Translations under genes and position numbers: made by a program
Origin: Pristiophorus japonicus
Lineage: Eukaryota
Assembly (NCBI RefSeq): GCF_044704955.1
Contig: NC_091999.1
Location: forward strand, 11,470,001 to 11,534,000
DNA: 64,000 nucleotides
Direction of reading: 5' to 3'
Notes under the pieces: generated by a model
The model's input: the letters and a program-made list of their open reading frames with translations, nothing else
Told to the model about the DNA's origin: nothing
Database searches by the model: none
Part shown: piece after piece, positions 7,229 to 45,690 of the stretch
Numbering within the stretch: the first letter of the stretch is position 1
How the letters are laid out: the number at the start of each line of letters is the position of its first letter

Positions 7229-7246
7229 CAGCGCCATCTGGTGGCC
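7229..7246 (-). promoter_or_regulatory. CTCF-binding-element-like motif ~40 bp downstream of a V RSS
   Basis: Minus strand reads GGCCACCAGATGGCGCTG, matching the CTCF core consensus CCASYAGRKGGCRS. Confidence 0.7.
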
Positions 7247-7286
7247 GGTTTTAACGTGTCCTCTTTCAGCTGATCTTGAAGAACAA

Positions 7287-7325
7287 GGTCTCTGTCCAAG
7301 GTTTTCCGAGGCACTTCTCACTGAG
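7287..7325 (-). other. 23-RSS with defective heptamer
   Basis: CTCAGTG-AGAAGTGCCTCGGAAAACCTTGG(23)-ACAGAGACC; the essential CAC is changed to CTC. Confidence 0.85.
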
Positions 7326-8110
7326 GGCCTCAGTGCACAGTAGTACATGGCGCTATCTGCCAGCTGCAGCTCAGTCAGGTGGAAAGCACTGATAGTTTTC
7401 GATTTTTCCAGAATAACAGAGAAACGGCCTTTAACGTCGCCCTTTACAAAAGAATGTGCCTGAATTACAAAAGTAGGTGCCGTGTTATAGCTCTGACGAT
7501 AAAGCTGCAGGCAATAGTTCAATTCTGAGGTTGAATAGTTACAATTAATGGTCATCGAGTTTACTTCCGGATATTGGACTTCTGTTGACCATTGTTTGAT
7601 GAAATCTCCAGAAATCAGTCCTGCAGAAAGCAATGAAACAGATGGAGGAACATATCAGGCATTTCTCTTTCTTTAAGAATATATCGTCGATTTCTCTGTG
7701 TATGGACAGGGCGAGAAAGGGAAGGAGAGAGAAAAACGCTCTAATTAATGGAATTATCTTGATAGATTGAGAGGTGGATCAATAGGGAGACAGAGAGAAA
7801 GGGAGATAAACAGACAGAGCGAGAGAGTTGGAGAGAGAGAAAAATACAGAGAGTGACACACAGAGAGACAGAGAGAAACAGGCCGATAGACAGGCAGAGA
7901 GACACGGAGAACTACAGAGAAACAGAGAGACGGAGAGATACAGACAGATAACAAAGAACGAGACAGAGAGGTTGATAGATCTCGAGATCGATTAATAGAA
8001 CGTAGTTGTGTTAATAGTGGAGTGGACAGACAGAGACAGATGTATAATTAAATAAACTAACCAAATAACAAAGGTGTTAGGCCCGCAATAACGAAACACC
8101 CAAGCTCCAT
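7326..8110 (-). CDS. TRAV: TCR alpha/delta V gene segment (leader exon 8110-8062, V exon 7620-7326); open frame, W41L, probably non-rearranging because of the heptamer
   Basis: Leader MELGCFVIAGLTPLLF-G|gttagt; acceptor tttctgcag; V reads GDFIKQ...INCNYST...LQLYRQ...GRFSV...DSAMYYCALRP; followed by a 23-RSS. Confidence 0.9.
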
Positions 8111-8224
8111 AATGGCCGCAGTCTCCGGACATTGGGACACCACACTTCACCCGGTGCCTCCTCTCAGCTGCAGCTTTCCGACTGAAGGGGAAAATTTGAA
8201 ATGTTTCTTTCAGCATACGGAGAC

Positions 8225-8237
8225 CGCGTCATTTCCT
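8225..8237 (-). promoter_or_regulatory. ETS/CRE-like composite element in a V promoter
   Basis: AGGAAATGACGCG ~115 bp upstream of the ATG; conserved as AGGAAATGACGAG in the paralog near 30652. Confidence 0.45.
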
Positions 8238-8689
8238 CAATCAAACCAAGGGCATGGTTGCAATGAGCTGCTAGTGATCATTGTCGCTGTCTGTGTTTAT
8301 CATCATTGTCCGCCGCCCCAGCACACAGGCTTCATGTGCTGTTCTGCTTCATCTGAATATCCGATCCCGGGAATTGGTGAGGATGCTGTCTGACTATTAT
8401 CGGTCTCACCCACAATTTCATGGACACATCATGGTCAGAAAGAGCGAAAAAACCTTCGATCAGGATTATTTTTTAATAGGATTCCAATTTGTCTGTTAAT
8501 GTTTCAAGGTTAACGTGGAATTGGTTGAATGGTTTCCTTGTGCAGAAGAAAAACTCAATTTGACACAAAAGAAAATCTGACATAATGCTGTCCCAATGTC
8601 TTCTATTTTCTTTCGATTTTTAAAACAGGCACCATGTGCTTCCCCCCCCCCCCCCACTCGCCCCCGCAAACTCACCCCCGCCCCCCGCC

Positions 8690-9125
8690 ATGTTCCTCAT
8701 TGATAATAACGGTCCTGCGTCCAGGTCAGTATATGTTCCAGGTGTTATATTTACTCCTAGACACATTCTGTATTGTTTTACAAGTCGAGTGTCAAAACTT
8801 CAGTGTCTCAGGATCTGTCTGAAATAATAGTTTAGGAAGGACAGACCATAATAATCAACTGTTTCCTCCACATCCGATAATTCTCCCTACCTCTTCTAGT
8901 ACATTAAGTATCGCGGGAAACTCCGTGATATGTATTGAATAGATACGGCAAGGGGCAGGAGTATCGGTCTCCAGATTTCCATGACCAGTTGTCTACTGTT
9001 TTGAAACAAGGGAAGAAGAAGGTTTCTTTAAGTATGGCCGGGGCTCTTACGTCTGACTCTGCCGTGTATCACTGTGCGCTACACCCGACACTGTTACAGG
9101 GGCATAGTCAATCCGTGCAAAAATC
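8690..9125 (+). pseudogene. TRAV/DV pseudogene with degenerate 23-RSS
   Basis: SVSQDLSEIIV*EGQTIIINC, SPYLF*Y and DSAVYHCALHP with frameshifts; RSS GACACTG-23-GCAAAAATC at 9087-9125. Confidence 0.85.
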
Positions 9126-9671
9126 AGTGAAGGACTCTAAACCCCTCTCAATGAATCAGATCTGGGACCTGAATTTTGATCTAATAGTAAAACGGCAACC
9201 AAACTATAAAGACCTGTTGGCCCGAATGGCCTTTTCTGTGCTGCACCTCCATGTCATTCTACCTAATATCTCCTATTATATTGGCTGTAGGTAGCTCTCA
9301 TGCTCTGGTAATTGGACGCTCCCGCACTGAACTACGTCTATTCACAGCCCTCACCTCAGAGACTGACTTACTAAATTGCCAACATTGCGTTCAACACCCG
9401 TCCAATTCTCTGTTTTGAGGAGAACAATTTCATTTTGTTCCCCTTTCCCTGCCCTGCCGTCATGAACTGGAGAACAAAGGACCTGTGAGCTTATTGGAAG
9501 AGTTGAAGAACAAAGGAAGTATGAGTTGATTGGATGCCACCTGTTGACTCTGATAGCAATGAACCAATCGGCAGAGAGATCGGATATTACTCGCTATCTT
9601 ACCAACACTTGACTAAAACAAATACAAGTTCGACCTGATCTGTTTGCATTCGGTATCAACTCTCGGCAAAC

Positions 9672-10161
9672 ATGTCTTTTGTTTCATTTTATTCATTTGT
9701 CACAGCTGCAGCTCTCTTAACTGGTAAGTTTACAAGTTACACACACTTCATTGTGCAGGTGTCACGAAAGTAGAGAATGTTCATTTCAACTGTGTTTTCT
9801 ATTTGTAATGTATTCCGTCACCGGATAAAGTTCTGTATTTCTAAATTTCTGCAGGTGTTAGTGATGCAGACTCGATCTCACAGAGGCCAAATAATGCGAT
9901 ACAGTTTGAAGGAGACTCGATGACAATTAATTACAGCTATTCGACCACTTCTACTTTCTATTCCTTACAACTGTACCGTCAGGACCGGGACAAAGGCCCC
10001 ACAATCTTAATCTTCATCCCATCTGTTGGGGATGTTTTCAGAGCAGAGGGCGTGGGGGTTCGAATTTCTGCTTCTCTCGACGCTGCTAAAAGTGAGGGAA
10101 ATTTCAACATCAGCGGCCTGCAGCTGCCTGACAGCGCGGTTTATTACTGTGGGCTGAGAGA
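9672..10161 (+). CDS. TRAV: TCR alpha/delta V gene segment (leader 9672-9723, V exon 9855-10161); open frame but Cys23>Tyr and Trp41>Leu
   Basis: Leader MSFVSFYSFVTAAALLT-G|gtaagt; acceptor tttctgcag; DSISQRP...MTINYSYST...LQLYRQ...DSAVYYCGLR. Confidence 0.9.
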
Positions 10162-10200
10162 CACAGTGACAAGAACCAAAGGTTGCCTCATACAAAAACA
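10162..10200 (+). other. Near-consensus 23-RSS
   Basis: CACAGTG-ACAAGAACCAAAGGTTGCCTCAT(23)-ACAAAAACA. Confidence 0.95.
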
Positions 10201-10769: not shown

Positions 10770-13700
10770 TGTGCAAAAACGGTCCGGTGCCAACGATTTA
10801 GGTAAAAAAAAACGGGATGAGGTCCTACAAGCTGAATTTAGGGAGCTACGAGTTAAATTAAAAAGTAGGACCTCAAAGGTAGTAATCTCAGGATTGCTAC
10901 CAGTGCCACGTGATGGTCAGAGTAGGAATCACAGGATCGATGATTACGTGGCCTGAGGAGTGGTGCAGAAGGGAGGGATTCAAATTCCTGGAAATTGAAA
11001 CCTGTTCTGGGGAAGGTGGAACCAATATAAACCGGACGGTCTGCACCTGGGCAGGACCCGAACCAAAGTGCTAGGGGGAGTGTTTGCTCGTACTGTTGGG
11101 GAGATGTTAAACTAATATGGCAGGGGGATGGGAACCTATGCAGGGAGGCAGAACTAAGTAAAATAGGGGGAGAAGCAAAAGACAGAAGGACGAAAAGTAA
11201 AAGTGGAGGGCAGAGAAACGCAAGGCACAAATCAAAAATGGCCACATTGCAGCAAAATTCTAAAAGGGCAAAGTGTTTTAAAAAGACAAGCCTGAAGGCT
11301 CTGTGCCTCAATGTGAGGAGTATCCGTAAAAAGGTGGATGAATTAACTGCCAAGGCAGCAATTAATGAATATGATATCACTGTCATCACGGAGACATGGC
11401 TCCAGGGTGACCAAGGCTGGAAACTCAACATGCAGGGATATTCAGCATTCAGGAAGGATAGACAGAAATGAAAAGGATCTGGGGTAGCGTTGCTGGTTAA
11501 GAGGAAATTAACGCAATAGTAAGGAAGGACATCAGCTTGGATGATATGGAATCTGTATGCGTGGAGTTGCGGAATAACAAAGGGCAGAAAACGCTAGTGG
11601 GAGTTGTGTACAGACCACCAAATAGTAGTAGTGAGGTTGGGGACAGCATCAAACAAGAAATGACGGATGCGTGCAATAAATGTACTGCCGTTATCATACC
11701 CGTCTTTAATCTACATATAGATTGGGCTAACCAAACTGGTAACAGTATGATGGAGGATCATTTCCTTGAATGTATTATGGATAGTTTTCTGGAACAATAT
11801 GTTGAGGAACGGACTAGACGGCTGGCCATCCTAGACTGGGTGATGCATAATGAGAAAGGCGTAATTAGCAATCTTGTTGTGCGAGGCCCCTTGGGGAAGA
11901 GTGACCATAATATGATAGAATTCCTTATTAAGATGGAGAATGACACAGTTCATTCAGAGACTAGGGTCCTGAACTTAAGGAAAGATAATTTCGATGGTAT
12001 GAGACGTAAATTGGCTAGAATAGACTGGAAAATGATACTTAGAGGTTTGACGGTGAATAGGCAATGGCAAATATTTAAAGGTGACATGAATGAACTTCAA
12101 CAACTGTACATCACTGTCTGGAGTAAAAATAAAACGGGGAAGGTGGCTCAACCGTGGCTAACAAGGGAAATGAATGATAGTGCTAAATCGAAGGAAGAGG
12201 CACATAAATTGCCAGAAAAAGAAGTAATTCTGAGGACTGGGAGAAATTTAGAATTCAGCAGAACGGTACAAAGGGTTTAATTAGGAGTTGGAAAAAAGAA
12301 TATGAGAGGAAACGTGCCGGGAACATAACAACTGACTGCAAATGCTTCTATAGATATGTGAAGAGAAAAAGATTAATGAAAACAAACGTAGGTCCCTGGC
12401 ATTCAGATTCAAGTGAATTTATAATGGGGCACAAAGAAATGGCAGACCAGTTGAAGAAATGCTTTGGTTCTGTCTTCACGAAGAAAGAACCAAATAACCT
12501 TTCGGAAGTACGAGGGGGCTGAGGGTCTTGAGCGAAGGAGGAACAGAAGGATATCGATATAAGGCGGAACATTTTGTTCGGGAAATTGATGAGATTGAAG
12601 GCCAATGAATCCGTGGGCCCGATAGTCTGCATCTTAGAGTACTTAAGGAAGCGGCCCTAGAAATAGTGGATGCATTGGTGATCATTTTCCAACATCTATC
12701 GACTCTGGATCAGTTCCTATGAACTGGAGGGTAGCTAATGTAACACCACTTTTTTAAAAGGAGGGTGAGAGAAAACGGGTAATTATCGACTGGTTAGCCT
12801 GACATCAGTAGTGGGGAAAATATTGAAATCAATAATTAATGATGAAATAACGGCGCATTTGGAAAGCAGTGACAGGATCAGTCCAATCAGCACGGATTTA
12901 TTAAAGGGAAATCATGCTTGACAAGTCTTCTGGAATTTTTTGAGGATGTAACTAGTAGAGTGGATAAGGGAGAACCAGTGGATATGGTGTATTTGGACAT
13001 TCAAAAGGCTTTTGACATGTTCCCACACAAGAGATTGTTTTGCAAAATTAAAGCACATGATATTGGGGTAATGTACTGCCGTGGATAGAGAACTGGTTGG
13101 CAGACAGGAAGCAGAGAGTCGGGATAAATGGGTCCTTTTCAGAATGGCAGGCAGTGACTAGTGAGGTGCCGCTGGGCTCAGTGCTGGGACCCTAGCTATT
13201 TAGAAAATACATTAATGGTTTCGATGAAGGAATTGAGTGTAATATATCCAAGTTTGCAGATGACACTAAACTGCGTGGCGTTGTGAGCTGTGAGGAATAA
13301 GCTAAGCGGCTGCAGAGTGACTTGCACATGTTAGGTTAGTGGGCAAATGCATGGCAGATGCGTTATAATGTGGTTAAATGTGAGGTTATCCACTTTGGGG
13401 GCAAAAACATGAAGGCAGAATATTATCTGAATGGCGCCAGATTAGGCAAAGGGGAGGTGCAACGAGACCTGCCTGTCATGATGCATCAGTCATTGAAAGA
13501 TTGCATGCAGGTACAGCAGGCGGTGAAGAATGCAAATCGTATGTTGGTCTTCACAGGTAGGTTTTTTTGAGTATAGGAGCAGGAATGTCTTACTGCAGTT
13601 GTACAGGGCCTTGGTGAGGCCTCACCTGGAATATTGTGTTCAGTTTGGTCTCCGAATCTGAGGAAGGACGTTCTGACTATTGAAGGAGTGCAGCGAAGGT

Positions 13701-14192
13701 TCACCAGACTGATTCGGGGGATGGCAGGACTGACATCTGAGGAGAGACTGGATCGACTGTGTCTTTATTCACTGGAGTTTAGAAGTATGAGAGGGGCTCT
13801 CATAGGAACATATACAATTCTGACTGGACAGGACAGGTTAGATGCAGGAAGAATGTTCCCGATGTTGGTGAAGTCCAGAACCAGAGGACACAGTCTAAGG
13901 ATAAGGCGTAAGCCATTTATAACTGAGATGAGGAGAAAGTTCTTCACTCAGAGAGTTGTTAACCTGTGGAATTCCCTACCGCAGAGATTTGTTGATGCCA
14001 GTTCGTTGGATATAATGAAAAGGAAGTAAGATGTGGCCCTTATGGCTAAATGGATCAAGGGGTATGGAGCGAAAGCAGGAAAGTGGTACTGAGACGAATG
14101 ATCAGCCATGATCTTATTGAATGGTGGTGCAGGCTCGAAAAGCCGTATGGCCTATTCCTGTAAATATTTTCTATGTTTCTATGTTTCTATGA
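10770..14192 (+). mobile_element. Near-full-length CR1 LINE (ORF1 SGNH/esterase C-terminus, ORF2 endonuclease + RT, 3' tail), inactivated
   Basis: GANDLGKK and DGLHL (ORF1); LNVRSI...ITETWL, VVYRPP and GKSDHN (EN); RT and C-terminal LEYCVQ-type segments; (tatgtttc)n tail; stops and frameshifts. Confidence 0.95.
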
Positions 14193-14216
14193 AACACCAC
14201 GTGCTGTTTTTGGGTC

Positions 14217-14234
14217 ACCCACCAGGGGGCGGCA
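14217..14234 (+). promoter_or_regulatory. CTCF-like motif
   Basis: ACCCACCAGGGGGCGGCA, a strong match to the consensus. Confidence 0.6.
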
Positions 14235-18490: not shown

Positions 18491-18529
18491 AGTTTCTGTA
18501 CGAGGGTTTAACTGGTCTCCATCATCGTG
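18491..18529 (-). other. 23-RSS
   Basis: CACGATG-ATGGAGACCAGTTAAACCCTCGT(23)-ACAGAAACT. Confidence 0.9.
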
Positions 18530-18995
18530 CGTCTCAGAGCACAGTAATAAACTGCAGTGTCCGTCTGCCGAAGTCCCGAGATGGTTAAACTGGTGAATTT
18601 ATTATCGATTTGGAGCTCTGGAGAGAAACGGTTTGCAGCAAAATCAGCTTTATCTTCATAACCATTGGTGTATTTCAACAGAATAAACTCGGGCTGTCTG
18701 TCTGGATAATGGCGGTACCAGTATAAATAATTTAAGCTGCGCGTGCTATCATAGGTACAGTTTAAAATCACCACGTCTCCTTCTGTCTTAACTCCCGAGG
18801 ACAGCGGCTGAGTGACAGAATCTCCTTGAATTAGATCTGAAATATATTTTCAATTCGGGAAAGATTAGACCGACGTGTGTTTAAACTTCAGATCCAATCC
18901 ATGTTTACGAAATGAGAGAAACGATTAAAAGTGTTTGCTCCACAGTTACCTGAAATAAATATCCCCCACACAACCCAAATGCTGAGTGTTTGCAT
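18530..18995 (-). CDS. TRAV: Apparently functional TCR alpha/delta V gene segment (leader 18995-18950, V exon 18836-18530)
   Basis: MQTLSIWVVWGIFIS-D|gtaact...tcag|LIQGDSVTQP...LNCTY...YLYWYRH...NRFSPEL...DTAVYYCALR; C23, W41 and C104 intact; 23-RSS present. Confidence 0.95.
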
Positions 18996-20479: not shown

Positions 20480-21090
20480 AGAGAAGAAGTTATCTTACAA
20501 ATACAGAAAAAGAGTGAGGAACAGAATGAGAAAGAGGTAGCGAGACAGATAGAAAGAGAGATGCATACAAACAGAGAGCGAGATAGACAAAGACAGAGAG
20601 AGAGAGAAGGAAAGTGAGATATATAGAAGCAGAGAGAGAGACAGCGGCAGAGACAGAGAGGTACAGACAGACAGAGAAACAGAGAGAGAGAGAGATGAAA
20701 AGTGAGATATATAGAAGCAGAGAGAGAGACAGCGGCAGATACAGAGAGGTACAGACAGACAGAGAAACAGAGAGAGAGAGAGAGATGGAAAGTGAGATAT
20801 ATAGAAGCAGAGAGAGAGACAGCGGCAGAGACAGGGAGGTACAGACAGACAGAGAAACAGAGAGAGAGAGATCGAAATAGATATACGCAGAAGGAGAGAC
20901 AGACAGCGAGATACACACAAACAAAGAGAGAAAGACAGACAGACAGAGAGGTACACACAAACAGCGACAGACACACAGAGAGACAGACTAACATGTACAT
21001 ATAAGAAGAAAGAGAGGCAGAGAGAGAATACACAAAAACAGGGAGAGAGAGTCAGACAGACAGAGAGCGCCACAGAGAGAGAGAGAGAGA
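20480..21090. repeat. GA-rich tract containing three ~87-bp tandem units (~20608-20870)
   Basis: aaagtgagatatatagaagcagagagagagacagcggcaga...acagagaaacagagagagag repeated three times. Confidence 0.9.
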
Positions 21091-21434
21091 TTGGCAGACA
21101 TGGAAATGGTGATCAATTCCCTAGTGTGAAAAGACAGGTACAGCACAGACGGCCACAATGGTAGATCAGTTGAGGAGTTTAAAAGGGGCACATTGAAAGT
21201 CGGGTATTGATGCATTGAAGAGAATTTGGATTAAAAATATTACAGCCTGTCGTGCTTAACAGTATAATGGCGTACAATGGATTGCTCCTATTTCTGTAAC
21301 GCATTCCTATCTTCTTACAGTTTTACAGCGATAACAGGTCAGTAACTGGGAGGTGACCCGGATTGCCCGAGACTGCCCACTTTCAAGAATCTCGCATTTT
21401 CCACTTTCTAAGCTCAATGTCTGAGACACGTGCT

Positions 21435-21685
21435 CCCTGTGTCTGTCAGTCTCCCGTCTCTGTCTTTCTGGCTCTATCTTTCTGTCACTGTCTCTCTCTC
21501 TCTGTCTCTTTGTCTGTCTATTTCTGTCTTTCTTGCCATTTGTGTGTTTCTCTCACTCTTTCTCACTCTGTTCCTCTGCCTCTCTATGTCTCTTTCTCTC
21601 AGTCTCTCGCTCTCTCTCCTCTTGCCGCATCAATCGTGAGCCCTGCTCTGTCTCTTTCTGTATCTGTAACGGTCTTTTACCCACC

Positions 21686-21721
<36 letters not shown>

Positions 21722-21787
21722 ATTTCTGTCTTTCTCACTATCTGTATCTCTCTCACGCTCTCTCTTCCCCGCCTCTATATATGTAAT

Positions 21788-21838
<51 letters not shown>

Positions 21839-22060
21839 ATCGATCTAACTATCTATCTATCTCTCTCTCTCCTCTCGCCGCCTCAATCGTTGTTCCCCCG
21901 TCCTGTCTCTTTCTGTATCTGTAACAGCCTTTTACCCCGCTCTCTGTCTCCCTCTATCTCGCTTTCACTCTTTCTATCCTTTTTTCCTGTCTTTCTTTCT
22001 CTATATCTCACTTTCTATCTAACTTTCAATAATATTATCTCTCTCTCTCTCTCTCTCTGA
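21435..22060. repeat. TC-rich polypyrimidine tract / (TC)n microsatellites
   Basis: Directly visible. Confidence 0.9.
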
Positions 22061-22284
22061 CGCGGTCTATCCTCATTTTCTGAAGGTAATGAGATGCATT
22101 TCCACATTTCTTAGTTCATATTCCAAAACATTCGCAAATATCATTTCATTTCAGTCAATCTTTTTTGCGGTTAGAAACCCACAGCCGGAAACTGTTGGTA
22201 TCTGATTCTGGTTCTGTCGGTGATGAAGTTCCGCTGTACACATATTGTACACCCAGACCACAGGCTATATTACAAGCCAGCCAT

Positions 22285-29749: not shown

Positions 29750-29767
29750 CAGCGCCACCTGCTGGCC
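29750..29767 (-). promoter_or_regulatory. CTCF-like motif ~40 bp downstream of a V RSS
   Basis: GGCCAGCAGGTGGCGCTG; paralog of 7229-7246. Confidence 0.7.
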
Positions 29768-29807
29768 GAGTTTAACGTATCTCCTTTGAGCTGATCTCAC
29801 AGAACAC

Positions 29808-29846
29808 GGTTACTGTACGAGGTGTCCCGAGGGCCTTCTCACTGTG
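29808..29846 (-). other. 23-RSS
   Basis: CACAGTG-AGAAGGCCCTCGGGACACCTCGT(23)-ACAGTAACC. Confidence 0.92.
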
Positions 29847-30537
29847 GAACTCAGTGCACAGTAGTACACGGCGCTGTCAGAGAGAAGCAGCTCAGTAATG
29901 GAGAAAACAGCGATATTTTTCGATTTTTCCAGAATGACAGAGAAACGGCCGTTAACTTCGTCCTTTCCAAAGGAATGTGCCTGAATTACGAAAGTCGGAG
30001 CCCTGCTCTGGCTCTGACGGTAAAGCTGCAGCGAATAGCTCGAATCTGTGGTTGAATAGCTACAATTAATGCTCATCGAGGTTCCCTCCAGATATTGGGC
30101 ATCTGTTGGCCACTGTTTCACGGAATCTCCAGAACTCAATCCTGCAGAAAATATTCCAGGTTACCCATGGAAACAGAATGAAAAAACAGCTAATAGCTAG
30201 ATATATTGATATGTAAAAACATAGAACTGATATTACTTTTTTATTTCTTTATGATATTATTTGACTGTGGTCGACTTATAGACAGACAGACGATGGGGCA
30301 GAAATATAAAGCTTCATATTAACGGCTGTACATTAACACATGAACAGCTTGATATAGACATACAGAGTAAAAGATAGACAAGCAGTTTGATGAATAATTG
30401 TACAGGCAGAGACATTGAGGAACGGAGGACTGTTGTATCAAGAGTGCAACGGACAGTTTGACACAAATGTATAAATAAATAAACCAACCAAATAACAACG
30501 TTGTAAGGAACCAAATAACGCAATACCCAAACTCCAT
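29847..30537 (-). CDS. TRAV: TCR alpha/delta V gene segment (leader 30537-30489, V exon 30141-29847); intact, LYRQ clade
   Basis: MEFGYCVIWFLTTLLF-G|gttggt; tttctgcag|LSSGDSVKQWP...INCSYST...LQLYRQ...DSAVYYCALS; canonical heptamer. Confidence 0.93.
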
Positions 30538-30779
30538 AATGGCCGCAGTCTCTCTACACTGTGTCTGCGCACTGCACCCGGTGCCTCCTGTCAGTTGCAG
30601 CTTTCGGACTGAATCGGCGAATTTGTGGTGTTTGCATCAGCACAAGGAGTCCTCGTCATTTCCTGCATCAAACCAAGATTCTGGTTTCAATGAGCTGCCG
30701 CTGATCATTGTGGCTGTCTGTGTTCATCATCTCTGCCCGCGGCCCCAGCACAGATGCTCCGTGTGATTTTCAGTTTTAT

Positions 30780-33030
30780 CATAAAATCATAGAAATTAAC
30801 ATCATGGACGGAGGGCATTTCGGCCCATCGTGTCCTTGCTGGCCAACACGAGGCTACTCACCCTAATCCCACTTTGGAGCTCTATGTGCGTTGCCTTCCA
30901 GGTTACAGCACTTTAAATGCACATCTAATTACTTTTTAAATGTAGTAAGGGCTTCTGCCTCGACCACTTTTTCAGGCAGTGAGTTGCAGACTCCCACAAC
31001 CGTCTGGGAGAAGAAACATCTCATGAAATCCTCTCTAAACCTTGTACCAATTACTTTAATGTTATTCCCCCTGGTTATTGACCGCTCGGTTAAGGGAAAT
31101 ACGCCTTTTATTTCCACGATATCTAGGCAGCTCGTAATTTTATACGTCACAATGAGATCTCGCCTCAGCCTTCTCTGCTCCACGGAAAACAAACACAGCC
31201 AATCCAATCTGTATCATAGCTAAGATGCTCCGCTCCCGGCAACATCCTCATAAATACTCTCTGTACCATCTCCAATGCAATCACTTCCTTCCTCTAACAC
31301 AGTGACCAGCACGCCAGCTGTGGATCAACTAGTGTTTTATACAGTTCACGCATAACCCCCTGCTCCTGTATTCTCATAATCATCATCATCATCTATGCCT
31401 CGGTTAATAAAGGCAAGAATTCCATGAGCATTCTTAACCACCTTATCTAGTTGGCCTGCTAACTTCAAGGATCTGTGGACGTGCACTCAAAGGTCCCTTT
31501 GCTCCTCTACACTTCTCAGAGTCCGACCAGTTAATGAGTATTCCCTTTCCTTATTAGCCCTCCACAAATTCATTAACTTACACTTTTTCAGATTAAATTC
31601 TATTTGCTACTGTTCTGCCCACCTGACCGGTTGACTGATGTCATTATGCAGTCTATAGCTTTCTTCTTCAGAATCAACCACACAGCCGATGTTCGTATCA
31701 TCTTCAAATTTCTTAATCATGCCCCCTATATTCAAGTCCAGATCATTGATGTAGACCCCATAAGCCAAGGCATGTAGAACTGAATCCTGCATAACCTCAC
31801 TGGAAACAACCTTCTGGAAACAGCCTTCCAGTCACAAAAACATCTATCAACCATTACTCTTTGCTTCCTGCCTTTGAGCAAATTTTTGATCCAAATTGCC
31901 ACTTTGCCCTGGATTCCATGGGCTTTTACTTTCGTGAACAGTCGTCCATGTGGAACCTTGTCAAAAGCCTTGCTGAAATCCATTTGACTACATCAAACGC
32001 ACTGCCCTCATCGACCCTCCTTTTTACCTCCTCAAAAAATTAAATCAAGTTAGTCAGACACGATGTTTCCTTAACAAATCCTTGCTTACTGTCCTTGATT
32101 AATGCGTGTCTTTCTAAATTAAGATTTATCCTGTCCTTCTGAATTTTTTCCAATAATTTTCCAACCACCGATATTACCATGAACTTGTCAGCCATGACCT
32201 CATTGAATGGCGGTGCAAGCTGGAAGGGCCTAATGGCCTACTCCTGCACCTATTTTCTATGTTTCTATGTCTATGTTTCTATGTTAGGTTGACTGGGATG
32301 TAATTACTCGGTCTATCCATTTCTCCCTTATTAAAAATGATACCACATTAGCTGTCCTCCAGTCCTCTGGCACGACACCTTAAGCCAGAGAGGTTTTTAA
32401 AATGATGGTCAAAGCCTCTGCTGCTACCTCTTTCGCTTCGATTAACAGCGTGGAATATATTTCATTCGGGGCTGGAGATATATCCTCTTTCAAAGCTGCC
32501 ACACCCCTTCATACCTCCTCTCACACTATGTTTTTTGATCTAATATATGACACTCCTCTTCCCCGAAAGCAGTGTCTGCATCGCCTCTCTCCTTTGTGAA
32601 AACAGACACAAAGTATTAATTAAGAACCATACCCACATCTCCCACCTCCACATACAGATTATCCTCATGGTCTTTAATAGGCCCTACACTATCTTCAGTT
32701 ATCCTCTTGATCCTAATATGTTTATAAAACATCTCTGGGTTTTCCTTGATTCTACTTGCCCAGAATTTTTCAGGCTCGCTCTTTGCCGACCTAATATCTT
32801 TTTTTAGTTTCACCCCTGCACTTTCGATACCGCTCCAGAGATTCTGCAGTATTTAGCCCTCGGTATATGTGATTCTTCTCTCTATCTTACCCTGTATGTC
32901 TCTCGACATCCAGGGAGCTCTAGACTTTTAGTCCCACCCTTTTTTTTAGGTCTACATATTTGGTCTGAAACCTCCGGATCTACTCCTTGAATGCCTCCCA
33001 CAGCTCTGACACTGATTTATCTTCTGCCCA
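30780..33030 (-). mobile_element. CR1 LINE (RT region to tail) with a nested + strand CR1 tail at ~32170-32283
   Basis: DFSKAFDKVPH, YINDLD...FEDDT and RRLRRDLI; the nested piece ends in (tatgtttc)n. Confidence 0.9.
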
Positions 33031-33747
33031 AACATCTGATCATTCGAAGGCAGGAATGTGTGAGGATTGTGCCCGACCGTTACTGGCCTCACACGCAATA
33101 TCGTGGAGACATCTCGGACTTGCTCCTAACTGCAACAACTACAACAAGAATAAAATCTTTTATTGATATTTTCTCAGTCGAAAATTACACTTCGATTGAA
33201 ATTTATTCTTCAAAAAATTTCCCATTTCTACCATGGTTTGAAATCAGTGGTTACGTTGAATAAGGAGTCGATTTCAGGGTTTACTTGCCACAATATCATT
33301 ACGTTAGAATGACCCATTAACGGAAGTTTACATTTAAACCCTTTTGGCTGCTTATCTGCTTATCTTTATCTCTCTGTGTTTGTGAGGTTGAATGCATGTG
33401 TCTGTGTGCATGTTGATCTGTCCGTCGTTTTTTATCTGTATGCAATTGTTTCGTTATTGGTTTGTGTTTGTGCCTGTGCATCGTTATATTTGTTCACTTT
33501 GCGTGTGTTTCCAATGCTGTATGTGAGCTTTGAAGAACGCACAATAGGGGACTCTCAGATCACATCTTCAAGTTCTTTCATCTTAAACAACTCAGCTGAA
33601 TTCACAAAAATAACCTCCACAACATATCCACCAGTGTGTACCAGTGATGTTGTGTGTGGGTGTGCGTATGTATGTGTGTGTGTGTGTGTGTGTGTCTGTC
33701 TGTCTGTCTGTCTCTGTATTTCCAATGCGCTCGGTCCAGTTTGTACT

Positions 33748-33765
33748 GTCCACAGGAGGGCGCTC
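33748..33765 (+). promoter_or_regulatory. CTCF-like motif ~270 bp upstream of a V leader
   Basis: GTCCACAGGAGGGCGCTC; a CAGGAAGTGACTC ETS/AP1-like site follows at ~33798. Confidence 0.5.
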
Positions 33766-34029: not shown

Positions 34030-34478
34030 ATGTTTTGCGTCCTCAGACAATTTACTATCTCCATCTCTGGGTAACTATTCCCTTTCTGTTACTCTGTCCA
34101 ACCTGTTGTGTATCTGCTGTTTATATCAGAGATGAGTAACGGAGACTCTGTATACCAGTCAGAACAAGTTGTCGGATCTGAAGAGAATGCAGATCCAGCA
34201 ATAACCTGCAGTTACTCTGTGTCGGGTTCAGCGACAAGCTATGGCCTATTCTGCTATCGCCAGTACACCCAGCAGGCCCCGCAGTATCTGCTCACAGCCC
34301 ATGATTATTGGAATAACGAAACCGCTCTCGGCTTTGAACACATCCACGGGATTCGCAAACGGAAACAAAGCACATTTCCTTTATCTGTGAAAGGATTGAA
34401 GATCAAAGAGGGGGCCGTGTATTACTGTGCCCTGAGACACACAGCAAAGAAGGGACTCTCGTGCATGTTGCAAAAACA
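34030..34478 (+). pseudogene. TRAV/DV segment: open V exon (34130-34439) but Trp41>Cys and an apparently out-of-phase leader; 23-RSS at 34440-34478
   Basis: GDSVYQS...ITCSYS...LFCYRQ...AVYYCALRH; RSS CACAGCA-23-GCAAAAACA; leader 34030-34070 is 41 nt (phase 2) while the V exon needs phase 1. Confidence 0.85.
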
Positions 34479-35950: not shown

Positions 35951-35951
35951 T

Positions 35952-39369: not shown

Positions 39370-41012
39370 AGAATAGTCGGGAAATTGTGTTGTGGAAATT
39401 CATTGGATTGAAGGCAGATCAATCCCCAGGGCCTGATGGACTGCATCCCAGAGTATTTAAGGAGGTGGCCTTGGAAATAGCGGTTGCATTGACAGTTATT
39501 TTACAACATTCCATGGACTCTGGATCAGTTCCTTGGAGTGCAGGATAGACAATTTAACTCCACTTTTTAAAAAAGGAGGAAAAGAAAACAGGGAATTATA
39601 GACCGGTCAACCTGACATTGGTTGTCGGTAAAATGATGGAATCAATTAATAAGGATTTCATAGCAGCGCATTTTGAAAGAAGTGACATGATATGTCCAAG
39701 TCAGCTTGGATTTGTGAAAGGGAAATCATGCTTGACAAAGCTTCTGGAATGTTTTGAGGATGTTTCCAGTAGAGTGGACAAGGGGGAACCAGTTGATGAG
39801 GTGTATTTGGACTTTGAGAAGGCTTTCGACAAGGTCACACACAAGAGATTAATATACAAAGTTAAAGCACATGGGATTGGGGGGGGGGGATGGGTAGTGT
39901 GCTGACGTGGATTGCGCACTGGTTGGCAGACAGGAAGCAAAGAGTAGGGGTAAATGGGTATTTTACAGAATGGCAGGCAGTGACTAGCTGGGTACCGCAA
40001 CGTTCTGTTCTGGGGCCACAGCTGTTTACATTGTATATCAATACTTAGACGAGCGGATTAAATGTAGTATCTCCAAATTGGCAGAAGACACTAATTGGGT
40101 GGCAGTGTGAGCTGCGAGGAAGATGCTATGAGGCTGCAGAGTGACTTGGATAGGTTAGGTGAGTGAGCAAATGCATGGCAGATGAGGTATAATGTGGATA
40201 AATGTGAGGTTATCCACTTTGGTGGCAAAACAGAGACAGACTATTATCTGAATGGTGACAGATTCGGAAAAGGGGAGGTGCAACCAGACGTGGGTGTCAT
40301 GGTACATCAGTCATTGAATGTTGGCATGCAGGTACAGCAGGCGGTTAAGAAAGCAAATGGCATGTTGGCCTTCATAGCGAGGTGATTTGAGTACAGGGGC
40401 AGGGTGGTATTATTACACTTGTACAGGGCCTTGGTGAGGCCACACCTGGAGTATTGTGTACAGTTTTGTTCTCCTAACTTGAGGAAGGACATTCTTGCTA
40501 TTGAGGGAGTGCAGCGAATGTTCACGAGACTGATACCCGGGATGGCGGGACTGACATCTCATGATAGACTGGATCAACTGGGCTTGTATTCATTGGAGTT
40601 CAGAAGAATGAGAGGGGATCTCATAGAAACGTTTGCAATTCTGACGGGTTTAGAAAGGTTAGATGCAGGAAGAATGTTCCTAATGTTGGGAAGTCCAGAA
40701 CCAGGGGTCGCAGTCTAAGGATAAGTGGTAAGCCATTTGGGACCGAGATGAGGAGACACGTCTTCACCCAGAGAGTGATGAACCTGTGGAATTCTCTCCC
40801 ACAGAAAATTGTTGAGGCTAATTCACTAAATATATTCAAAAAGGAGTTAGAGATAGTCCTTACTACTAGGGGGTTCAAGAGGTATGGCGAGAAAGCAGGA
40901 ATGTGGTACTGAAGTTGCATGTTCAGCCATGAACTCATTGAATGGCGGTGCAGGCTCGAAGGGCCGAATGGCCTACTCCTGCACCTATTTTTTATGTTTC
41001 TATGTTTCTATG
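39370..41012 (+). mobile_element. 5'-truncated CR1 LINE
   Basis: SPGPDGLHPRV, YLDFEKAFDKV and RPHLEYCVQF; (tatgtttc)n tail. Confidence 0.92.
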
Positions 41013-41014
41013 TA

Positions 41015-42140
41015 ATACCACATATTAGGCTTGTTAGCAAAATTGAAGCGTTTGAGATATAAACGGCATTATCAGCATGGATACAAAATTGGCAAAGGGA
41101 CATAAATCAGGATGATGTCTGCTTGTCGGACTGGAGGGCGGAATACAGTGGTGTTCGCCAGGGTCCAGTACTTCGACCACAGCTGCCGTTGATATATATT
41201 AATGATTTGGACTTGTGGGTACAGGGCATAATTTCGAAATTTGCAAATGGCACGAAACTTGGCAGCGTCGTAAACAGTATTGAAGATAGTTATATACTAG
41301 AAGAGGAGATAGACAGACTAGTGAAGTGGGCGGTATCGTGGAAGATGAAATTCAATGCAGAAAATTGTGAGGTGACACATTTTTGTAGGAAGGATAAGGA
41401 GAGACAATGCAAGCTAAATTTAAAAAAAATTAAAGAAACTGCAAAAACAGAGAGGTCTGGGTGTATTTGTGCACAAACCCTTGTGGGTGGCAGGACAGGT
41501 TAATAAAGCAGTTAATGAAACGTATGGGATTCGGGGTTCTATAAAGAAAGGCATAGCGTATAAAAGCGAGGAAGTTATGCTAAACCAACGTAAAACGCTA
41601 GTTCGGACCCAAGAAAAAATATTAGTCCAATTCTGGGCACCACACATTAGGAAGCTGTGGAGAGGGTATGGAGAGATCTACTAGGATTGTGCCAGGATGT
41701 GGAGATACAGTCACGTGGATAGCCTGGCGATCTGGATTTGTTCTCCTCGGGGCAGAGAAGGCCAAGAGGAAATTTGATACATGTTTTTGAAAACATTAAG
41801 GGTTTAGAAAGAGAATATAATGACATACTACTATGAATAGCGGAATAGTCAATAACCAGACAACACATATTTAAGGGGATTGGGATAAGAACCAGAGGCG
41901 GCATTTGGAAAAACGTTTTAGTGCAACGAGTGGTTAGGATTTGGAATACACTGCCTGATAGAGTGATGGAAACAGCCTTCAAAGGGATACTGGACAAATA
42001 ATTAAAGGAAAAATAATCGGAGGGATGTAGGGAAGGAGCAGAGCATGGAGCTAACCGCTTTGCTCCTCGAAAAAGCCTGCATAGACAAGATGAGCTGAAT
42101 GGTCTAATTCGATGTTGCACTACTCTAAGATATTATGATG
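41015..42140 (+). mobile_element. Older CR1 LINE RT/3' fragment
   Basis: SGVRQGPVL, YINDLD, FANGTKL and VQFWAP. Confidence 0.85.
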
Positions 42141-42390
42141 ACCCCCGCTGCTTCAGCCTCAGTCCAGAACTTCACTCCCAGGGCCGCCGTGGTTACACTG
42201 CCGCCACCTCAGTCCAGATATCTCAGTCATAGGGCCGCCTAGATTGCACTGCTCCCCCCAAAGTTAATGAACTTCACTATCAGTACCACCTAGATGACAC
42301 ATCTCCCTCCATATTCCACGGATTTCACTCCCAGGGCCAATTAGATTACACTGCCTGCTCCTCAATCCAGCTATTTAACTACCAGGGTAT
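42140..42390. repeat. ~50-bp minisatellite, about 5 diverged copies
   Basis: cctcagtccaga..ttcactcccagggcc...gattacactgc units. Confidence 0.7.
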
Positions 42391-42649
42391 ATTTTATTGT
42401 GGCTAGTAGAACAAGAACATCATCAACTTGTTTCGACCCAGGTAGACATGTTCTGGTAATTTATAGAAGCGAAGAAAACTGAATGGAGAAAAGTGTTGAC
42501 ACAAAGGAATCAAAGGAAACTGCATAAAATATTCCCGAATCACACAAATATCCTTTAAACATCTACACTTTACATGAAACTCTTGGGAAGAATTCGAAGC
42601 CTCGCTTAAACAAAATCACAGAACCATGTCTATCAGTCAACATATCCCA

Positions 42650-43232
42650 TGCCTGCATCTATTCACAATCTATATCAATGGTTTAAATGAGGGGACCAAA
42701 TGTGATGTATCCAAGTTTGTTGATGATACAAAGCTATATAGGAATGTACTTTATGAGGAGGATGCAAAGAGGCTTGAAGTCGATACCGATAGGTTAAGTG
42801 TGCGAGCAAGATCTAAGCAAATTGAATGTAATTTCGAGAAGTGTGAAGATATCCACTTTGGCAGGAAATATGAAAGCAGAGTACTTCTAAATGGTGAGAG
42901 ATTGGGAAATAAGAAATAAGAAATAGAAGCAGGCGTAAGCCATACTGCCCCCCGAGCCTGCTCCACCATTTAATACGATCATGGCTGATCCGATCATGGA
43001 GTCATGTTGGTGCTCACCGTGACCTTCGTGCCCCTGTGCAGGAATCTTTGAAAGTTAACATGCAGGTGTAGCAAACGATTAAGAAAGACCATTGTATGCT
43101 GGCCTTTATTACGCAGGATTGGAGTATAAGAGTAAAGTATGTCTTAATGCAATTATATATGGCCTGGTGAGACCACACCTGGAATATTGTGAACAGTTTT
43201 TGTATCCTTACCTAAGGAAGGGTTTACTTGCC
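42650..43232 (+). mobile_element. CR1 RT fragments
   Basis: FTIYING, KFVDDTKL and VRPHLEYC. Confidence 0.8.
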
Positions 43233-43234
43233 AT

Positions 43235-43790
43235 CAGCATCATATGCAGTCTTTTGGAGACGAGAGTGACTTGCTTCCAACACTAGAAATTAGGCCTCAG
43301 GTAATTGAAGAGTCCAATACGGAGCCTACAGTCTCTGATATAGGTGGCGCAAACGGTGGGTGAAGGAACAGGTGGGTGGCGTGCCTGGGTTGCCACGCGC
43401 TCCATCTGTTGTCGATGCTTGGTTTCAGCTTGCTTGGTGAAGAGACTCGAGAAGTTCAGCCTCTTCCCGGATCCTTTTCCTCCACTTTGGGCGGACTCAG
43501 GCCAGGGATTCCCAGGTGTCAATGGGGATTACATTTTTCAATGAGGCCTTGAGACTGTTCTTGAAGTGTTTCCTCTGCCCACCTGGGGCTCACTTGGTGT
43601 CGGCGCTCCGAGTAGAGCGCTTGCTTTGGCAGTCTCGTGACAGGCATGCGGGCAATGTGGCCTGTCCAGCGGAGCTGATCGAGCGTGGTTAGTGCTTCGA
43701 TGTTGTGGATATTGGCCTGAGCGAGGACACTGACATTGGTGTGCCTATCCTGCCAATGGATTTTCAGGATCTTGCGGAGGCAGTATTGGT
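43235..43790 (-). mobile_element. RTE-clade LINE 3' fragment
   Basis: Minus strand LRWTGHIARMPVTRLPKQALYS...APGGQRKHFK, typical of the RTE C-terminus. Confidence 0.8.
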
Positions 43791-45336
43791 GGGGATCAAG
43801 GGGTATGGAGAGAAAGCAGAAAAGTGGTACTGAGGGAATGATCAGCCATGATCTTATCTAATGATGGTTCAGACTCGAAGGGCCGAATGGCCTACTCCTA
43901 CACCTATTTTCTATGTTTCTTTGTTTCTATGTTTCTATGTGCTGATCAGCAAGGGTCAAATCTCCCAGCGGAAACAGTGAATTTTTAAGCTCATCTTCAT
44001 TTAATTGTTTTTTTTTTCTCACTGTAAGTGATCATGTACAAGGCTCGGCATTCATCATCAGTGTCACCGTAATATACCTCCCAATAAATGGACACTGGGA
44101 ACTGTTCCATACACAGGCTTATTGTCTGTTTTCACCCAGTATCTGAACAATATAAAAGGTCTCATCGGATCCGTTAGAGGGCGCCGTGGTCACAGATTCC
44201 TCGCCGCTCCCTGGGGACGTGAACCGTTAAACTTTCTGATTTGTATAAACACATTGTAATTTCAAAGCTTACTTTTATCTGTTTTTGTTTTCATGGGATT
44301 CAGCAAATTTCTCCCATCCCTTTTACTTCATCAGCTATTCATCATCACTATCGCTACCACACTTATGAATTAATCCTTATGCTGCAATTCTTAAAGCTAC
44401 AGCAAGTGACATTTTTATTAGCTGTCGTTTAGAACAATACACCTTATATATTAATATATGGAATGGACGAAATACTCCGAGAGACAAGACTGTAACCCGG
44501 GTGAGGAGTTTCTCCCGTATCACTAACCACCATTTGCCTTTGCATGTGATTAATTTCAGCACAGTGTAATGGCATCTGCTGTTCGTTTCAGGCTGACATT
44601 AATCTAATACTTTCGGCAGAAATTTGGCGAAGGGACTCATAACCCCGTCGAGAAATTAACGACACAGTCGGATGATGGTGGTAAGATATTATCTCGGTGA
44701 AAATACAACGGTTTCAATATAGATGAAGATGTTCAGCTTCCTTCACTCACGCTCACCAATCAGACAGGGATGGAGTTTGATTACCCTTCTGCTGGGGAAA
44801 CACAAGGGGAAGATTTCCACTGGTCTCTGTGGAAATCTCATCTGAAAGTTGTTTTGGCGGAATCACAATGTAATTCTTTTAGAATGCATTCAGTACTTTG
44901 TCAGAAATAGCGACAAGAGCAAATCGACCGCACAGAGTGGACAGATCCCTGTAAACACTAATGTTACAGGAGAAAGACATTAATGCCCTTGTTGAATCAT
45001 TGCACACCAGCAAAAAATAAACAGACAGTCAGTAAAGTGACTGATTCCGGCCTGGTGAATATAATCGCACAATGACGCAATGCTAAAGCTTTCCTCGCCC
45101 CAAAGACTGCACACAGCGAGTGACTGACTCTACAGGCCGATATTTTATGCTGCGACCGTCAGTATCGATGATCAAACCTGCTATCATTAGAACTTATAGA
45201 GACAATCCTTGCAGTAACATTGCCTGAGGCAGCCCCTTCCACAGCTTCCGTTCGCTGCTCTTGTTCTCACCCGCCTTGCCTGCCCTGTGTCATTGGAGAG
45301 ATTGCTGCAGCTGTTACGAAACTGTAAACAGGTGGA

Positions 45337-45470
45337 AGGTTTTGTATAGTAACTGCCGCGTTTCCTCTCAGTGTGTGGTCTAATGCACAGTAATACACCA
45401 CGGTATCCGTGCTCTCCGTTCTCTCAATGACCAGTTGACAGCATTTGTCCGCAGTGAAAACATCCAATTC
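45337..45470 (-). pseudogene. 5'-truncated V remnant (FR3 only) with an intact 23-RSS
   Basis: ADKCCQLVIERTESTDTVVYYCALD; RSS CACACTG-AGAGGAAACGCGGCAGTTACTAT(23)-ACAAAACCT at 45375-45337. Confidence 0.85.
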
Positions 45471-45673
45471 ATGGATGGCAGGCATGGAAAGGACATCGAG
45501 TGGCAAAAAGGTGTGTTCTGGCACTATAGATGGATTTGTGAAGTTCATTTTTATCATTTTGAAATTACCAACTAATGCAAGTCCCCCAGAGGACTTTACC
45601 TTTTCTTGTTCCGTGTAATGTTTTGTCGAACTTTTAAGAAGGACCATGTGACACTCAATGTTTACCAGTGTGA

Positions 45674-45690
45674 GAGTGCCCTCTGGTGAG
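45674..45690 (-). promoter_or_regulatory. CTCF-like motif ~23 bp downstream of a V RSS
   Basis: CTCACCAGAGGGCACTC. Confidence 0.6.

What the first reader, a model, noticed from the sequence alone, without database searches (positions are those of the whole stretch)
7229..45690. CTCF motifs just downstream of V RSSs in a shark TCR alpha/delta V array
Seen: strong CTCF-consensus motifs lie 23-40 bp 3' of the RSS nonamer of three V genes from two different families, each in the same orientation as the V. They are 7229-7246 (GGCCACCAGATGGCGCTG), 29750-29767 (GGCCAGCAGGTGGCGCTG) and 45674-45690 (CTCACCAGAGGGCACTC). The first two paralogs differ at positions the consensus tolerates. Known: in mouse Igh, RSS-proximal CBEs beside proximal VH genes promote their use during cohesin loop-extrusion RAG scanning. 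Inference: a similar V-CBE arrangement may operate in cartilaginous fish, making it ancestral to jawed vertebrates.
Basis: partly seen in the sequence, partly recalled or inferred. Interest (0 to 1): 0.8.

Follow-up and report, generated by a model that had tools for sequence, protein, structure and literature searches.

The report
CTCF sites behind shark V-gene RSSs
Three T-cell-receptor-type V gene segments of a sawshark carry a strong CTCF-type DNA motif on their own strand just past their recombination signal, the layout that steers antibody heavy-chain V gene choice in mice, but here only the sequence motif supports it, not binding or usage data.

Summary
Observation confirmed. Their 14-nt cores start 42, 42 and 24 nt past the nonamers of V1 and V9 (paralogs) and V12 (another family). 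Two match the published consensus exactly and one has a single mismatch.

Of 13 RSS-bearing V segments, 3 have a co-oriented motif of at least 17 bits within 100 bp past the nonamer. The window's own motif density predicts 0.06 (permutation P=3.5e-5, or 1.6e-3 with the paralogs counted once). There are none in the opposite orientation and none in the next 900 bp.

The layout matches the RSS-associated CTCF sites of mammalian Igh VH genes. It does not match the promoter-side sites of mouse TCR alpha/delta.

The evidence is motif-only:
- Paralog conservation is only suggestive (P about 0.04).
- V1 has a broken heptamer and V12 lacks Cys23.
- 10 of 13 RSSs lack the motif.
- No RNA, binding or cross-species data could be obtained.

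"Ancestral to jawed vertebrates" remains untested. The scan had already noted the same module on other DNA of this genome (17 notes, one followed up). This window adds a second flank type, not a first sighting.

The parts
7328..7639 (-). V1, V exon of a TCR alpha/delta-type V segment (family A). The ORF is open and Cys23 is present.
   Evidence: tblastn and translation. Coordinates are the ends of the tblastn alignment, so approximate.
7287..7325 (-). V1 23-RSS: heptamer CTCAGTG (lacks the CAC start, so probably defective), 23-nt spacer, nonamer ACAGAGACC
   Evidence: RSS scan; coordinates
7229..7247 (-). CTCF-type motif behind V1: 25.5 bits, 14-nt core 7231-7244, an exact consensus match, 42 nt past the nonamer
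29849..30160 (-). V9, V exon, paralog of V1 (67% aa identity). The ORF is open with Cys23 and Cys104. A leader candidate starts at 30415.
   Evidence: The best full-length single-domain PDB matches are TCR alpha chains.
29808..29846 (-). V9 23-RSS: CACAGTG / 23 / ACAGTAACC
29750..29768 (-). CTCF-type motif behind V9: 26.0 bits, core 29752-29765, an exact consensus match, 42 nt past the nonamer
45756..46067 (-). V12, V exon of a different family (27% aa identity to V9). The ORF is open but has Ala where Cys23 is expected. A leader candidate starts at 46246.
   Evidence: The best full-length single-domain PDB matches are TCR alpha chains.
45714..45753 (-). V12 RSS: CACACTG / 24 / ACAAAAACC (a 23-nt spacer if the nonamer is read one base earlier)
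45674..45692 (-). CTCF-type motif behind V12: 17.35 bits, core 45676-45689, 1 mismatch to the consensus, 24 nt past the nonamer
10162..10200 (+). Comparator: near-perfect 23-RSS of V3 with no strong motif behind it. There is only a 9.5-bit match 66 nt on, and it is not at the position homologous to the V1/V9 site.
18491..18529 (-). Comparator: RSS of the intact-looking V5 (family B), with no CTCF-type motif within 200 nt (best 0.5 bits)
63682..63720 (+). Comparator: near-perfect 23-RSS of the intact V14, with only a 7.2-bit match directly behind it

Best explanation
These are genuine, non-randomly placed CTCF-binding-type elements belonging to the cassettes of two V families in a sawshark TCR alpha/delta-type V array.

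Each lies on the V's sense strand, 24 nt (V12 type) or 42 nt (V1/V9 type) past the RSS nonamer. By the usual account of CTCF geometry (recalled), the cohesin-blocking face of bound CTCF would then point away from the V, towards whatever lies downstream of the RSS.

The most likely mechanism is the one shown for mouse Igh proximal VH genes. CTCF bound there stalls cohesin-driven loop extrusion coming from the recombination centre. This holds the adjacent RSS near RAG and raises use of that V. It also acts as a barrier to scanning further upstream.

Shown here: motif quality, position, orientation and enrichment at RSSs. Inferred: CTCF occupancy in thymocytes, any effect on V usage, and the deletional orientation of these V segments relative to J-C.
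For: Motif strength: 25.5, 26.0 and 17.35 bits out of a maximum of 28.2. Two are exact and one is a one-mismatch match to the published 14-nt consensus, against 0.00 and 0.59 expected in shuffles.

Placement: 3 of 13 RSS downstream zones hold a co-oriented motif of at least 17 bits, against 0.058 expected from the window's own density. Permutation gives P(>=3)=3.5e-5 and P(>=2)=1.6e-3. In a profile of 1 kb either side of the 13 nonamers, the first downstream 100-nt bin holds 3 such motifs. Only two other bins hold one each: V10's upstream site, and V12's own site counted again from the neighbouring V11 fragment. There are 0 opposite-orientation hits at that threshold in all 20 bins.

Two flank types that do not align with each other carry the motif in the same orientation.

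The V1 and V9 cores differ at 2 of 14 positions, both at tolerated positions. A simulation at the flank's 23.6% divergence keeps an exact match in only 4% of trials.

All 3 motif-bearing V segments have open reading frames: 3 of 7 ORF-intact V segments carry the motif, against 0 of 6 broken or fragmentary ones.

Literature: RSS-associated CTCF sites at a fixed 17-19 bp (mouse) or 19/48 bp (human), in one orientation (PMC6746451, sections 6-7). Deleting the VH5-2 CBE cuts its rearrangement 50-fold (PMC10293834, passage). A CTCF orientation code and loop extrusion exist in the little skate, found with the same matrix (PMC10115646, passages).

Unchecked scan notes report the same module in other windows of this genome.
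Against: There are no binding, accessibility, contact or usage data.

Only two occurrences in this window are independent, and 10 of 13 RSSs lack the motif. These include the intact-looking V5 and V14 and the near-perfect RSS of V3.

Conservation between V1 and V9 is not exceptional as raw identity. The core is 12/14 identical, against 74-76% in the neighbouring segments, and 80 of 348 14-column windows of the flank are equally conserved.

V1 keeps a perfect motif although its heptamer lacks CAC. V12 lacks Cys23. The link between motif and open reading frame is not significant (Fisher one-sided P=0.12).

V segments lie on both strands (5 of the 13 RSS-bearing V segments are on +, 8 on -). The strong motifs in the window are 4 on - and 3 on +, unlike the near-uniform orientation in mouse Igh. 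The position of J-C is unknown, so I cannot show that the motifs point at the recombination centre.
Confidence: 0.5

Rival explanations
1. Neutral passengers. A CTCF-like sequence arose by chance or was carried in once per V family, then spread because V cassettes duplicate together with their flanks. It has no role in recombination and may not be bound.
For: The V1 and V9 flanks are paralogous over about 400 nt past the RSS, at a uniform 74-79% identity. The core is no better conserved than 23% of flank windows (80 of 348). V1's RSS heptamer is broken yet its motif is perfect. Only 2 independent occurrences exist here, and 10 of 13 RSSs lack the motif. The window is rich in strong CTCF-type motifs elsewhere too (4 of 7 are not at an RSS).
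Against: Even with the window's own high motif density as background, and with the paralogs counted once, the permutation P is 1.6e-3. Both independent flank types have the motif on the V strand within 45 nt of the nonamer, and nothing comparable occurs in the next 900 nt. Both V1/V9 substitutions fall at tolerated positions (P about 0.04). Unchecked scan notes describe further V families with the same module.
Confidence: 0.25
2. Real CTCF sites with another job. They would insulate neighbouring V cassettes from each other's promoters or germline transcripts, or partition the array into small loops, without directly promoting RAG access to the adjacent RSS.
For: Other strong motifs in the window lie upstream of V exons or between genes: 33747(+) lies 370 nt before V10, 14216(+) about 860 nt before the V4 fragment, and 47796(-) and 47013(+) lie 1-1.7 kb upstream of V12. 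This recalls the 'upstream' and 'intergenic' classes that PMC6746451 (sections 7 and 18) suggests may insulate V segments.
Against: The tight, fixed proximity to the nonamer (24 and 42 nt) and the strict co-orientation are what the RSS-linked role predicts. An insulator has no need for them.
Confidence: 0.2
3. The functional unit is an E-box for E-proteins (E2A/HEB), not a CTCF site. CAGATG (V1) and CAGGTG (V9) lie inside the cores, and CAGCTG sits a few bases upstream of the V12 core.
For: The sequences themselves show it. That E-proteins act near V segments is recalled, not checked here.
Against: CAGRTG is part of the CTCF consensus whenever the K position is T. The matches span all 14 consensus positions, far beyond a 6-nt E-box. 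The V12 core itself has no E-box.
Confidence: 0.05

Closest known systems
RSS-associated CTCF-binding elements of mammalian Igh proximal VH genes (mouse 7183/Q52 and other families; human homologues)
   Same: A strong CTCF consensus just 3' of the V 23-RSS nonamer at a family-specific fixed distance, in the V's own orientation. It is present in some V families and absent in others. (PMC6746451 sections 5-7, 16 and 18 read; PMC7930373 and PMC10293834 passages.)
   Different: The locus type differs (TCR alpha/delta-type V segments, not VH). The offset is 24 and 42 nt rather than 17-19 (mouse) or 19/48 (human). The lineage is a cartilaginous fish. V segments lie on both strands here. Nothing about binding or function has been tested.
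CTCF sites of the mouse Tcra/Tcrd V region
   Same: The same type of antigen-receptor locus. Most sites are oriented towards J-C (129 of 144; PMC5859386 passage).
   Different: [quoted passage not shown] The shark sites studied here are RSS-proximal.
CTCF orientation code at TAD boundaries in the little skate
   Same: It shows that the mammalian-type CTCF matrix marks oriented loop anchors in a cartilaginous fish (PMC10115646 passages).
   Different: It is a genome-wide architectural feature measured in fin tissue. Nothing in it concerns antigen-receptor loci or RSSs.

Membership tests
RSS-associated CTCF-binding element (mammalian Igh type) | Sequence matches the CTCF core consensus | tested here: met
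   Two exact matches and one 1-mismatch match to CCASYAGRKGGCRS. They score 25.5, 26.0 and 17.35 bits with a recalled MA0139.1 matrix.
RSS-associated CTCF-binding element (mammalian Igh type) | Lies a short, fixed distance downstream of the V RSS nonamer | tested here: met
   The core starts 42, 42 and 24 nt past the nonamer. That is fixed within the one paralog pair, but the values differ from mouse (17-19) and human (19 or 48).
RSS-associated CTCF-binding element (mammalian Igh type) | Same orientation relative to V transcription at all sites | tested here: met
   3 of 3 RSS-proximal motifs are on the V strand, and 0 opposite-orientation hits of at least 17 bits occur within 1 kb of 13 RSSs. 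One 11.9-bit opposite-strand match lies behind the pseudogene V13.
RSS-associated CTCF-binding element (mammalian Igh type) | Near-uniform orientation of CTCF sites across the V domain, convergent with sites at the D/J/C end | tested here: inconclusive
   Strong motifs in the window are 4 on - and 3 on +, but V segments also lie on both strands. The J-C end is outside the window and was not located.
RSS-associated CTCF-binding element (mammalian Igh type) | Motif conserved like the RSS and better than the spacer between RSS and motif | tested here: inconclusive
   For V1 against V9, the core is 12/14 identical, the 42-nt spacer 32/42, the heptamer 6/7 and the nonamer 7/9. P is about 0.04 that an exact match survives neutrally, but 80 of 348 windows are equally conserved. 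Only one paralog pair was available.
RSS-associated CTCF-binding element (mammalian Igh type) | Associated with functional V segments rather than pseudogenes | tested here: inconclusive
   3 of 7 ORF-intact V segments against 0 of 6 broken ones, Fisher one-sided P=0.12. V1 has a CTC heptamer start and V12 lacks Cys23.
RSS-associated CTCF-binding element (mammalian Igh type) | Bound by CTCF and cohesin in recombining lymphocyte precursors | not testable with these tools
   No ChIP or ATAC run was found. The only holders of the stretch are 4 DNA contig sets from one study.
RSS-associated CTCF-binding element (mammalian Igh type) | Promotes use of the adjacent V and impedes scanning further upstream | not testable with these tools
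   No RNA or repertoire data. The three other runs of the species cover only a high-copy repeat.
TCR alpha/delta-type V gene segment | V-set domain closest to TCR alpha/delta V segments, followed by a 23-RSS | tested here: met
   The best full-length single-domain PDB matches are TCR alpha chains (E about 1e-12 to 1e-14). Higher-ranked rows are multi-domain scFv chains. RSS spacers are 23 or 24 nt. Linkage to a TCR alpha/delta constant gene was not testable in this window.

The most novel reading that the evidence does not exclude
RSS-proximal, V-co-oriented CTCF elements are a locus-wide design feature of the elasmobranch TCR alpha/delta V array, gained or kept separately in several V families. 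If so, CTCF/cohesin-guided presentation of V RSSs to RAG already operated in the common ancestor of jawed vertebrates. Mammals would then have kept the RSS-linked form only at Igh and moved to promoter-side sites at Tcra/Tcrd.
Probability: 0.2. Interest if true: 0.8.

Novelty: new member of a known kind. Interest (0 to 1): 0.58.

Why it matters
RSS-associated CTCF sites are a key part of the loop-extrusion and RAG-scanning model. In the papers I could read, they are described only for mammalian Igh (mouse, human, chimpanzee, rabbit).

Four full-text searches found no paper describing them in any non-mammal or in a TCR alpha/delta locus.

If they are real in a shark, this would give a concrete, testable handle on how old architectural control of V choice is, and on whether it arose once or repeatedly. 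It would also name specific sites for ChIP, 3C and repertoire work in shark thymus.

Tried and rejected
(1) V3's weak motif as a decayed homologue of the V1/V9 site. Rejected: in the three-way alignment it falls opposite a different flank segment, and the V1/V9 motif region is a gap in V3.

(2) A transposon-borne motif. Self-BLAST of the window shows the two flank types only at V1/V9 and at V12, not in the LINE-like or other repeats. DNA contigs of the source sample include two further pieces lying over the V9 flank, with 44 of 353 and 37 of 313 letters different (table 8). These are probably more paralogs elsewhere in the genome. Their letters at the motif were not among the rows shown.

(3) Expression or usage evidence. 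One search listed no RNA holder. Runs X5-X7 of the same species gave zero depth over V9 and V10 and covered only the high-copy repeat at about 30.7-33.0 kb. Nothing was learned.

(4) Cross-species loci through protein search. The V12 and V9 exons found no relatives in the word-indexed collection. Only 1 and 2 candidates shared words, so that collection seems to hold hardly any vertebrate V domains. I therefore did not spend the large profile search, and no orthologous loci could be fetched.

(5) Direction of the J-C end, from scan notes. Not found.

(6) The E-box reading. See the rival explanations.

(7) Strand bias. All 3 motif-bearing V segments are on the minus strand, but 8 of the 13 RSS zones are too, so chance is about 0.23. 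I dropped it as evidence.

Supplementary tables of PMC6746451 (site lists and densities for other loci and species) were closed. They may bear on whether any mammalian TCR alpha/delta V has an RSS-associated site.

Jain et al. 2018, the original VH81X-CBE work, is recalled and was not read. I rely on passages of PMC10293834, PMC7930373 and bioRxiv 10.1101/2020.01.01.891473 that describe it.

Full report
**What is in the window.**
The window has no gaps. It holds at least 14 V-like segments on both strands, found by a pattern for V-gene ends and by tblastn with six of the window's own V exons. Thirteen of them have a recognisable RSS.
- Open reading frames: V1 (7328-7639, -), V3 (9845-10159, +), V5 (18532-18843, -), V9 (29849-30160, -), V10 (34117-34437, +), V12 (45756-46067, -) and V14 (63368-63679, +).
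- Stops or fragments: V2, V4, V7, V8, V11 and V13. V6 has no RSS and was left out of all RSS counts.
- For V9 and V12, the best full-length single-domain matches among solved structures are TCR alpha chains. Higher-ranked rows are multi-domain scFv chains.
- A scan note calls the genome a sawshark. I did not verify the species.

**The observation.**
The three quoted strings are the exact reverse complements of 7229-7246, 29750-29767 and 45674-45690. They lie on the minus strand, as do V1, V9 and V12.
- The RSSs are 7287-7325, 29808-29846 and 45714-45753.
- The 14-nt cores start 42, 42 and 24 nt past the nonamer.
- With the consensus printed in PMC6746451, the window holds 4 exact matches (0.00 expected from 100 shuffles). 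They include the V1 and V9 sites.
- With up to 1 mismatch it holds 7 matches (0.59 expected), which adds the V12 site.
- A recalled JASPAR matrix gives 25.5, 26.0 and 17.35 bits. It finds 7 sites of at least 17 bits, and 30 at p<1e-4 against 12.8 expected.

**Is the placement more than chance?**
- I took the 100 nt past each of the 13 nonamers. Three zones hold a co-oriented site of at least 17 bits, against 0.058 expected from the window's own (high) density.
- Moving the 13 zones at random 200,000 times gives P(>=3)=3.5e-5 and P(>=2)=1.6e-3. The second figure is the fair one, because V1 and V9 are paralogs whose flanks align at 78.8% over 704 nt.
- In 100-nt bins from -1 kb to +1 kb, only the first downstream bin is enriched. 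The two other hits are V10's upstream site and V12's own site seen from the neighbouring V11 fragment. No opposite-strand site of at least 17 bits occurs in any bin.
- Against this, 10 of 13 RSSs have nothing comparable. They include V5 and V14, which look intact, and V3 with a near-perfect RSS. The best co-oriented scores behind them are 0.5, 7.2 and 9.5 bits. The pseudogene V13 has an 11.9-bit match on the opposite strand.

**Selection or hitch-hiking?**
- Between V1 and V9 the core is 12/14 identical. The 42-nt spacer is 32/42 identical, and the next 100 columns are 76/100.
- Both core changes keep an exact consensus match. Mutating one copy at the flank's 23.6% divergence keeps an exact match in about 4% of 200,000 trials.
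- Yet 80 of 348 14-column windows of the flank are as well conserved. This is suggestive only.
- The V12 flank does not align with the V1/V9 flank, and the offsets differ. The motif is therefore either old with a remodelled spacer or was gained twice.
- V3, a distant relative of V1 and V9, has no homologous site.
- Function of the bearers is mixed. V9 looks fully intact, V1 has a heptamer starting CTC, and V12 has Ala at the Cys23 position.
- Motif presence is 3 of 7 ORF-intact against 0 of 6 broken V segments (Fisher one-sided P=0.12).

**Comparison with what is known.**
- PMC6746451 (abstract and sections 5, 6, 7, 16 and 18 read) describes RSS-associated CTCF sites 17-19 bp past the nonamer in mouse VH and 19 or 48 bp in human. 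They occur in some families only and mostly at functional members. More than 98% of VH-domain sites share one orientation. Its species comparison covers mammals only.
- PMC7930373 and bioRxiv 10.1101/2020.01.01.891473 (passages) state that proximal VH CBEs lie just 3' of the RSS and promote V use during RAG scanning.
- PMC10293834 (passages) reports a 50-fold fall in VH5-2 rearrangement when its CBE is deleted.
- PMC5859386 (passages, including Table 2) places mouse TCR alpha/delta V-region CTCF sites mostly upstream of V promoters, with 129 of 144 pointing to J-C.
- PMC10115646 and bioRxiv 10.64898/2026.10.19.759930 (passages) show a CTCF orientation code in the little skate and in lamprey. 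A mammalian-type matrix is therefore meaningful in a shark.
- Searches for shark, cartilaginous, teleost or 'RSS-associated' together with CTCF found no paper reporting such sites outside mammals. In PMC9911811 the single CTCF passage concerns mouse.

**Mechanism.**
The forward motif on the V strand, downstream of the RSS, places the site between the RSS and whatever lies downstream. By the usual account (recalled), cohesin arriving from that side meets CTCF's blocking face. This is the geometry of mouse proximal VH CBEs. For V segments in deletional orientation, it would hold the RSS next to a J-based recombination centre.

Not shown here: that these V segments face J-C, that CTCF binds, or that usage is affected. 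V segments on both strands (5 of 13 on +) mean that part of the array must rearrange by inversion, or not at all. None of the plus-strand V segments has a strong RSS-proximal site, but the numbers are too small to count as evidence.

**What could not be done.**
- Reads: only DNA contig sets of one study hold the stretch, and three other runs of the species cover just a high-copy repeat.
- Protein word searches with V12 and V9 found nothing, so no loci from other species could be compared.
- The position of J-C was not found in scan notes.

**Earlier notes of this scan.**
Seventeen notes mention CTCF with RSS in this genome. They come from windows up to about 1.2 Mb before this one and 78 kb beyond it. 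Most describe a 24-25 nt offset, and one was followed up with the same motif-only verdict. I treat them as leads. They fit V12's 24-nt type being widespread, and they make the 42-nt V1/V9 type the new element here.

**Verdict.**
The analogy with mammalian Igh RSS-associated CBEs is well founded at sequence level. Function is plausible but untested, and 'ancestral to jawed vertebrates' is speculation for now.

Noticed in passing
window 14216-14234 (+), 33747-33765 (+), 47013-47031 (+), 47796-47814 (-): Four further strong CTCF-type motifs (17-22 bits) lie away from any RSS. One is 370 nt upstream of the V10 exon, one about 860 nt upstream of the V4 fragment, and two are 1-1.7 kb upstream of V12, facing each other. 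They recall the 'upstream' class of mouse VH CTCF sites. Another note of the scan (s1-874875) covers them.
   Followed up: partly
window 7328-7639, 9845-10159, 29849-30160: All three family-A V segments (V1, V3, V9) read L-Y-R-Q where V domains normally have W-Y-R-Q. The near-invariant Trp41 is Leu across paralogs that are 42-67% identical. V3 also has Tyr at Cys23, and V10 has Cys at the Trp41 position.
   Followed up: no
window 45337-45449 (-): Only about 225 nt downstream of V12's CTCF-type site lies the 3' end of another V (FR3 with YYC). It has an intact-looking 23-RSS (CACACTG / ACAAAACCT) but no CTCF-type motif behind it.
   Followed up: partly
window 30679-33042: A very high-copy repeat. 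Summed contig depth there is thousands to millions, against about 5-45 over the neighbouring V genes, in all four runs laid.
   Followed up: no
window 2782-4424, 11848-14200, 39375-41021, 48326-50216, 55987-57847, 59404-61211: At least six copies, on both strands, of a 1.5-2.3 kb interspersed repeat (65-84% identity). It looks LINE-like by size and spread, but its ORFs were not examined. The strong CTCF-type motif at 14216 starts 16-24 nt past the end of one copy, and the other copies lack it.
   Followed up: no
whole window: V segments alternate in orientation in blocks: - + + + - - - - - + - - - +. Part of this array could therefore only rearrange by inversion. Whether this is true structure or an assembly effect was not tested.
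   Followed up: no
window 20497-22071: A cluster of internal direct and inverted repeats (units of about 90-260 nt, 66-77% identity) lies just upstream of the pseudogene V7.
   Followed up: no
window 46244-48185 and 61797-63391: The regions upstream of V12 and of V13 share 67-79% similar blocks, partly inverted, although the two V exons belong to different families. Only the V12 copy carries strong CTCF-type motifs.
   Followed up: no
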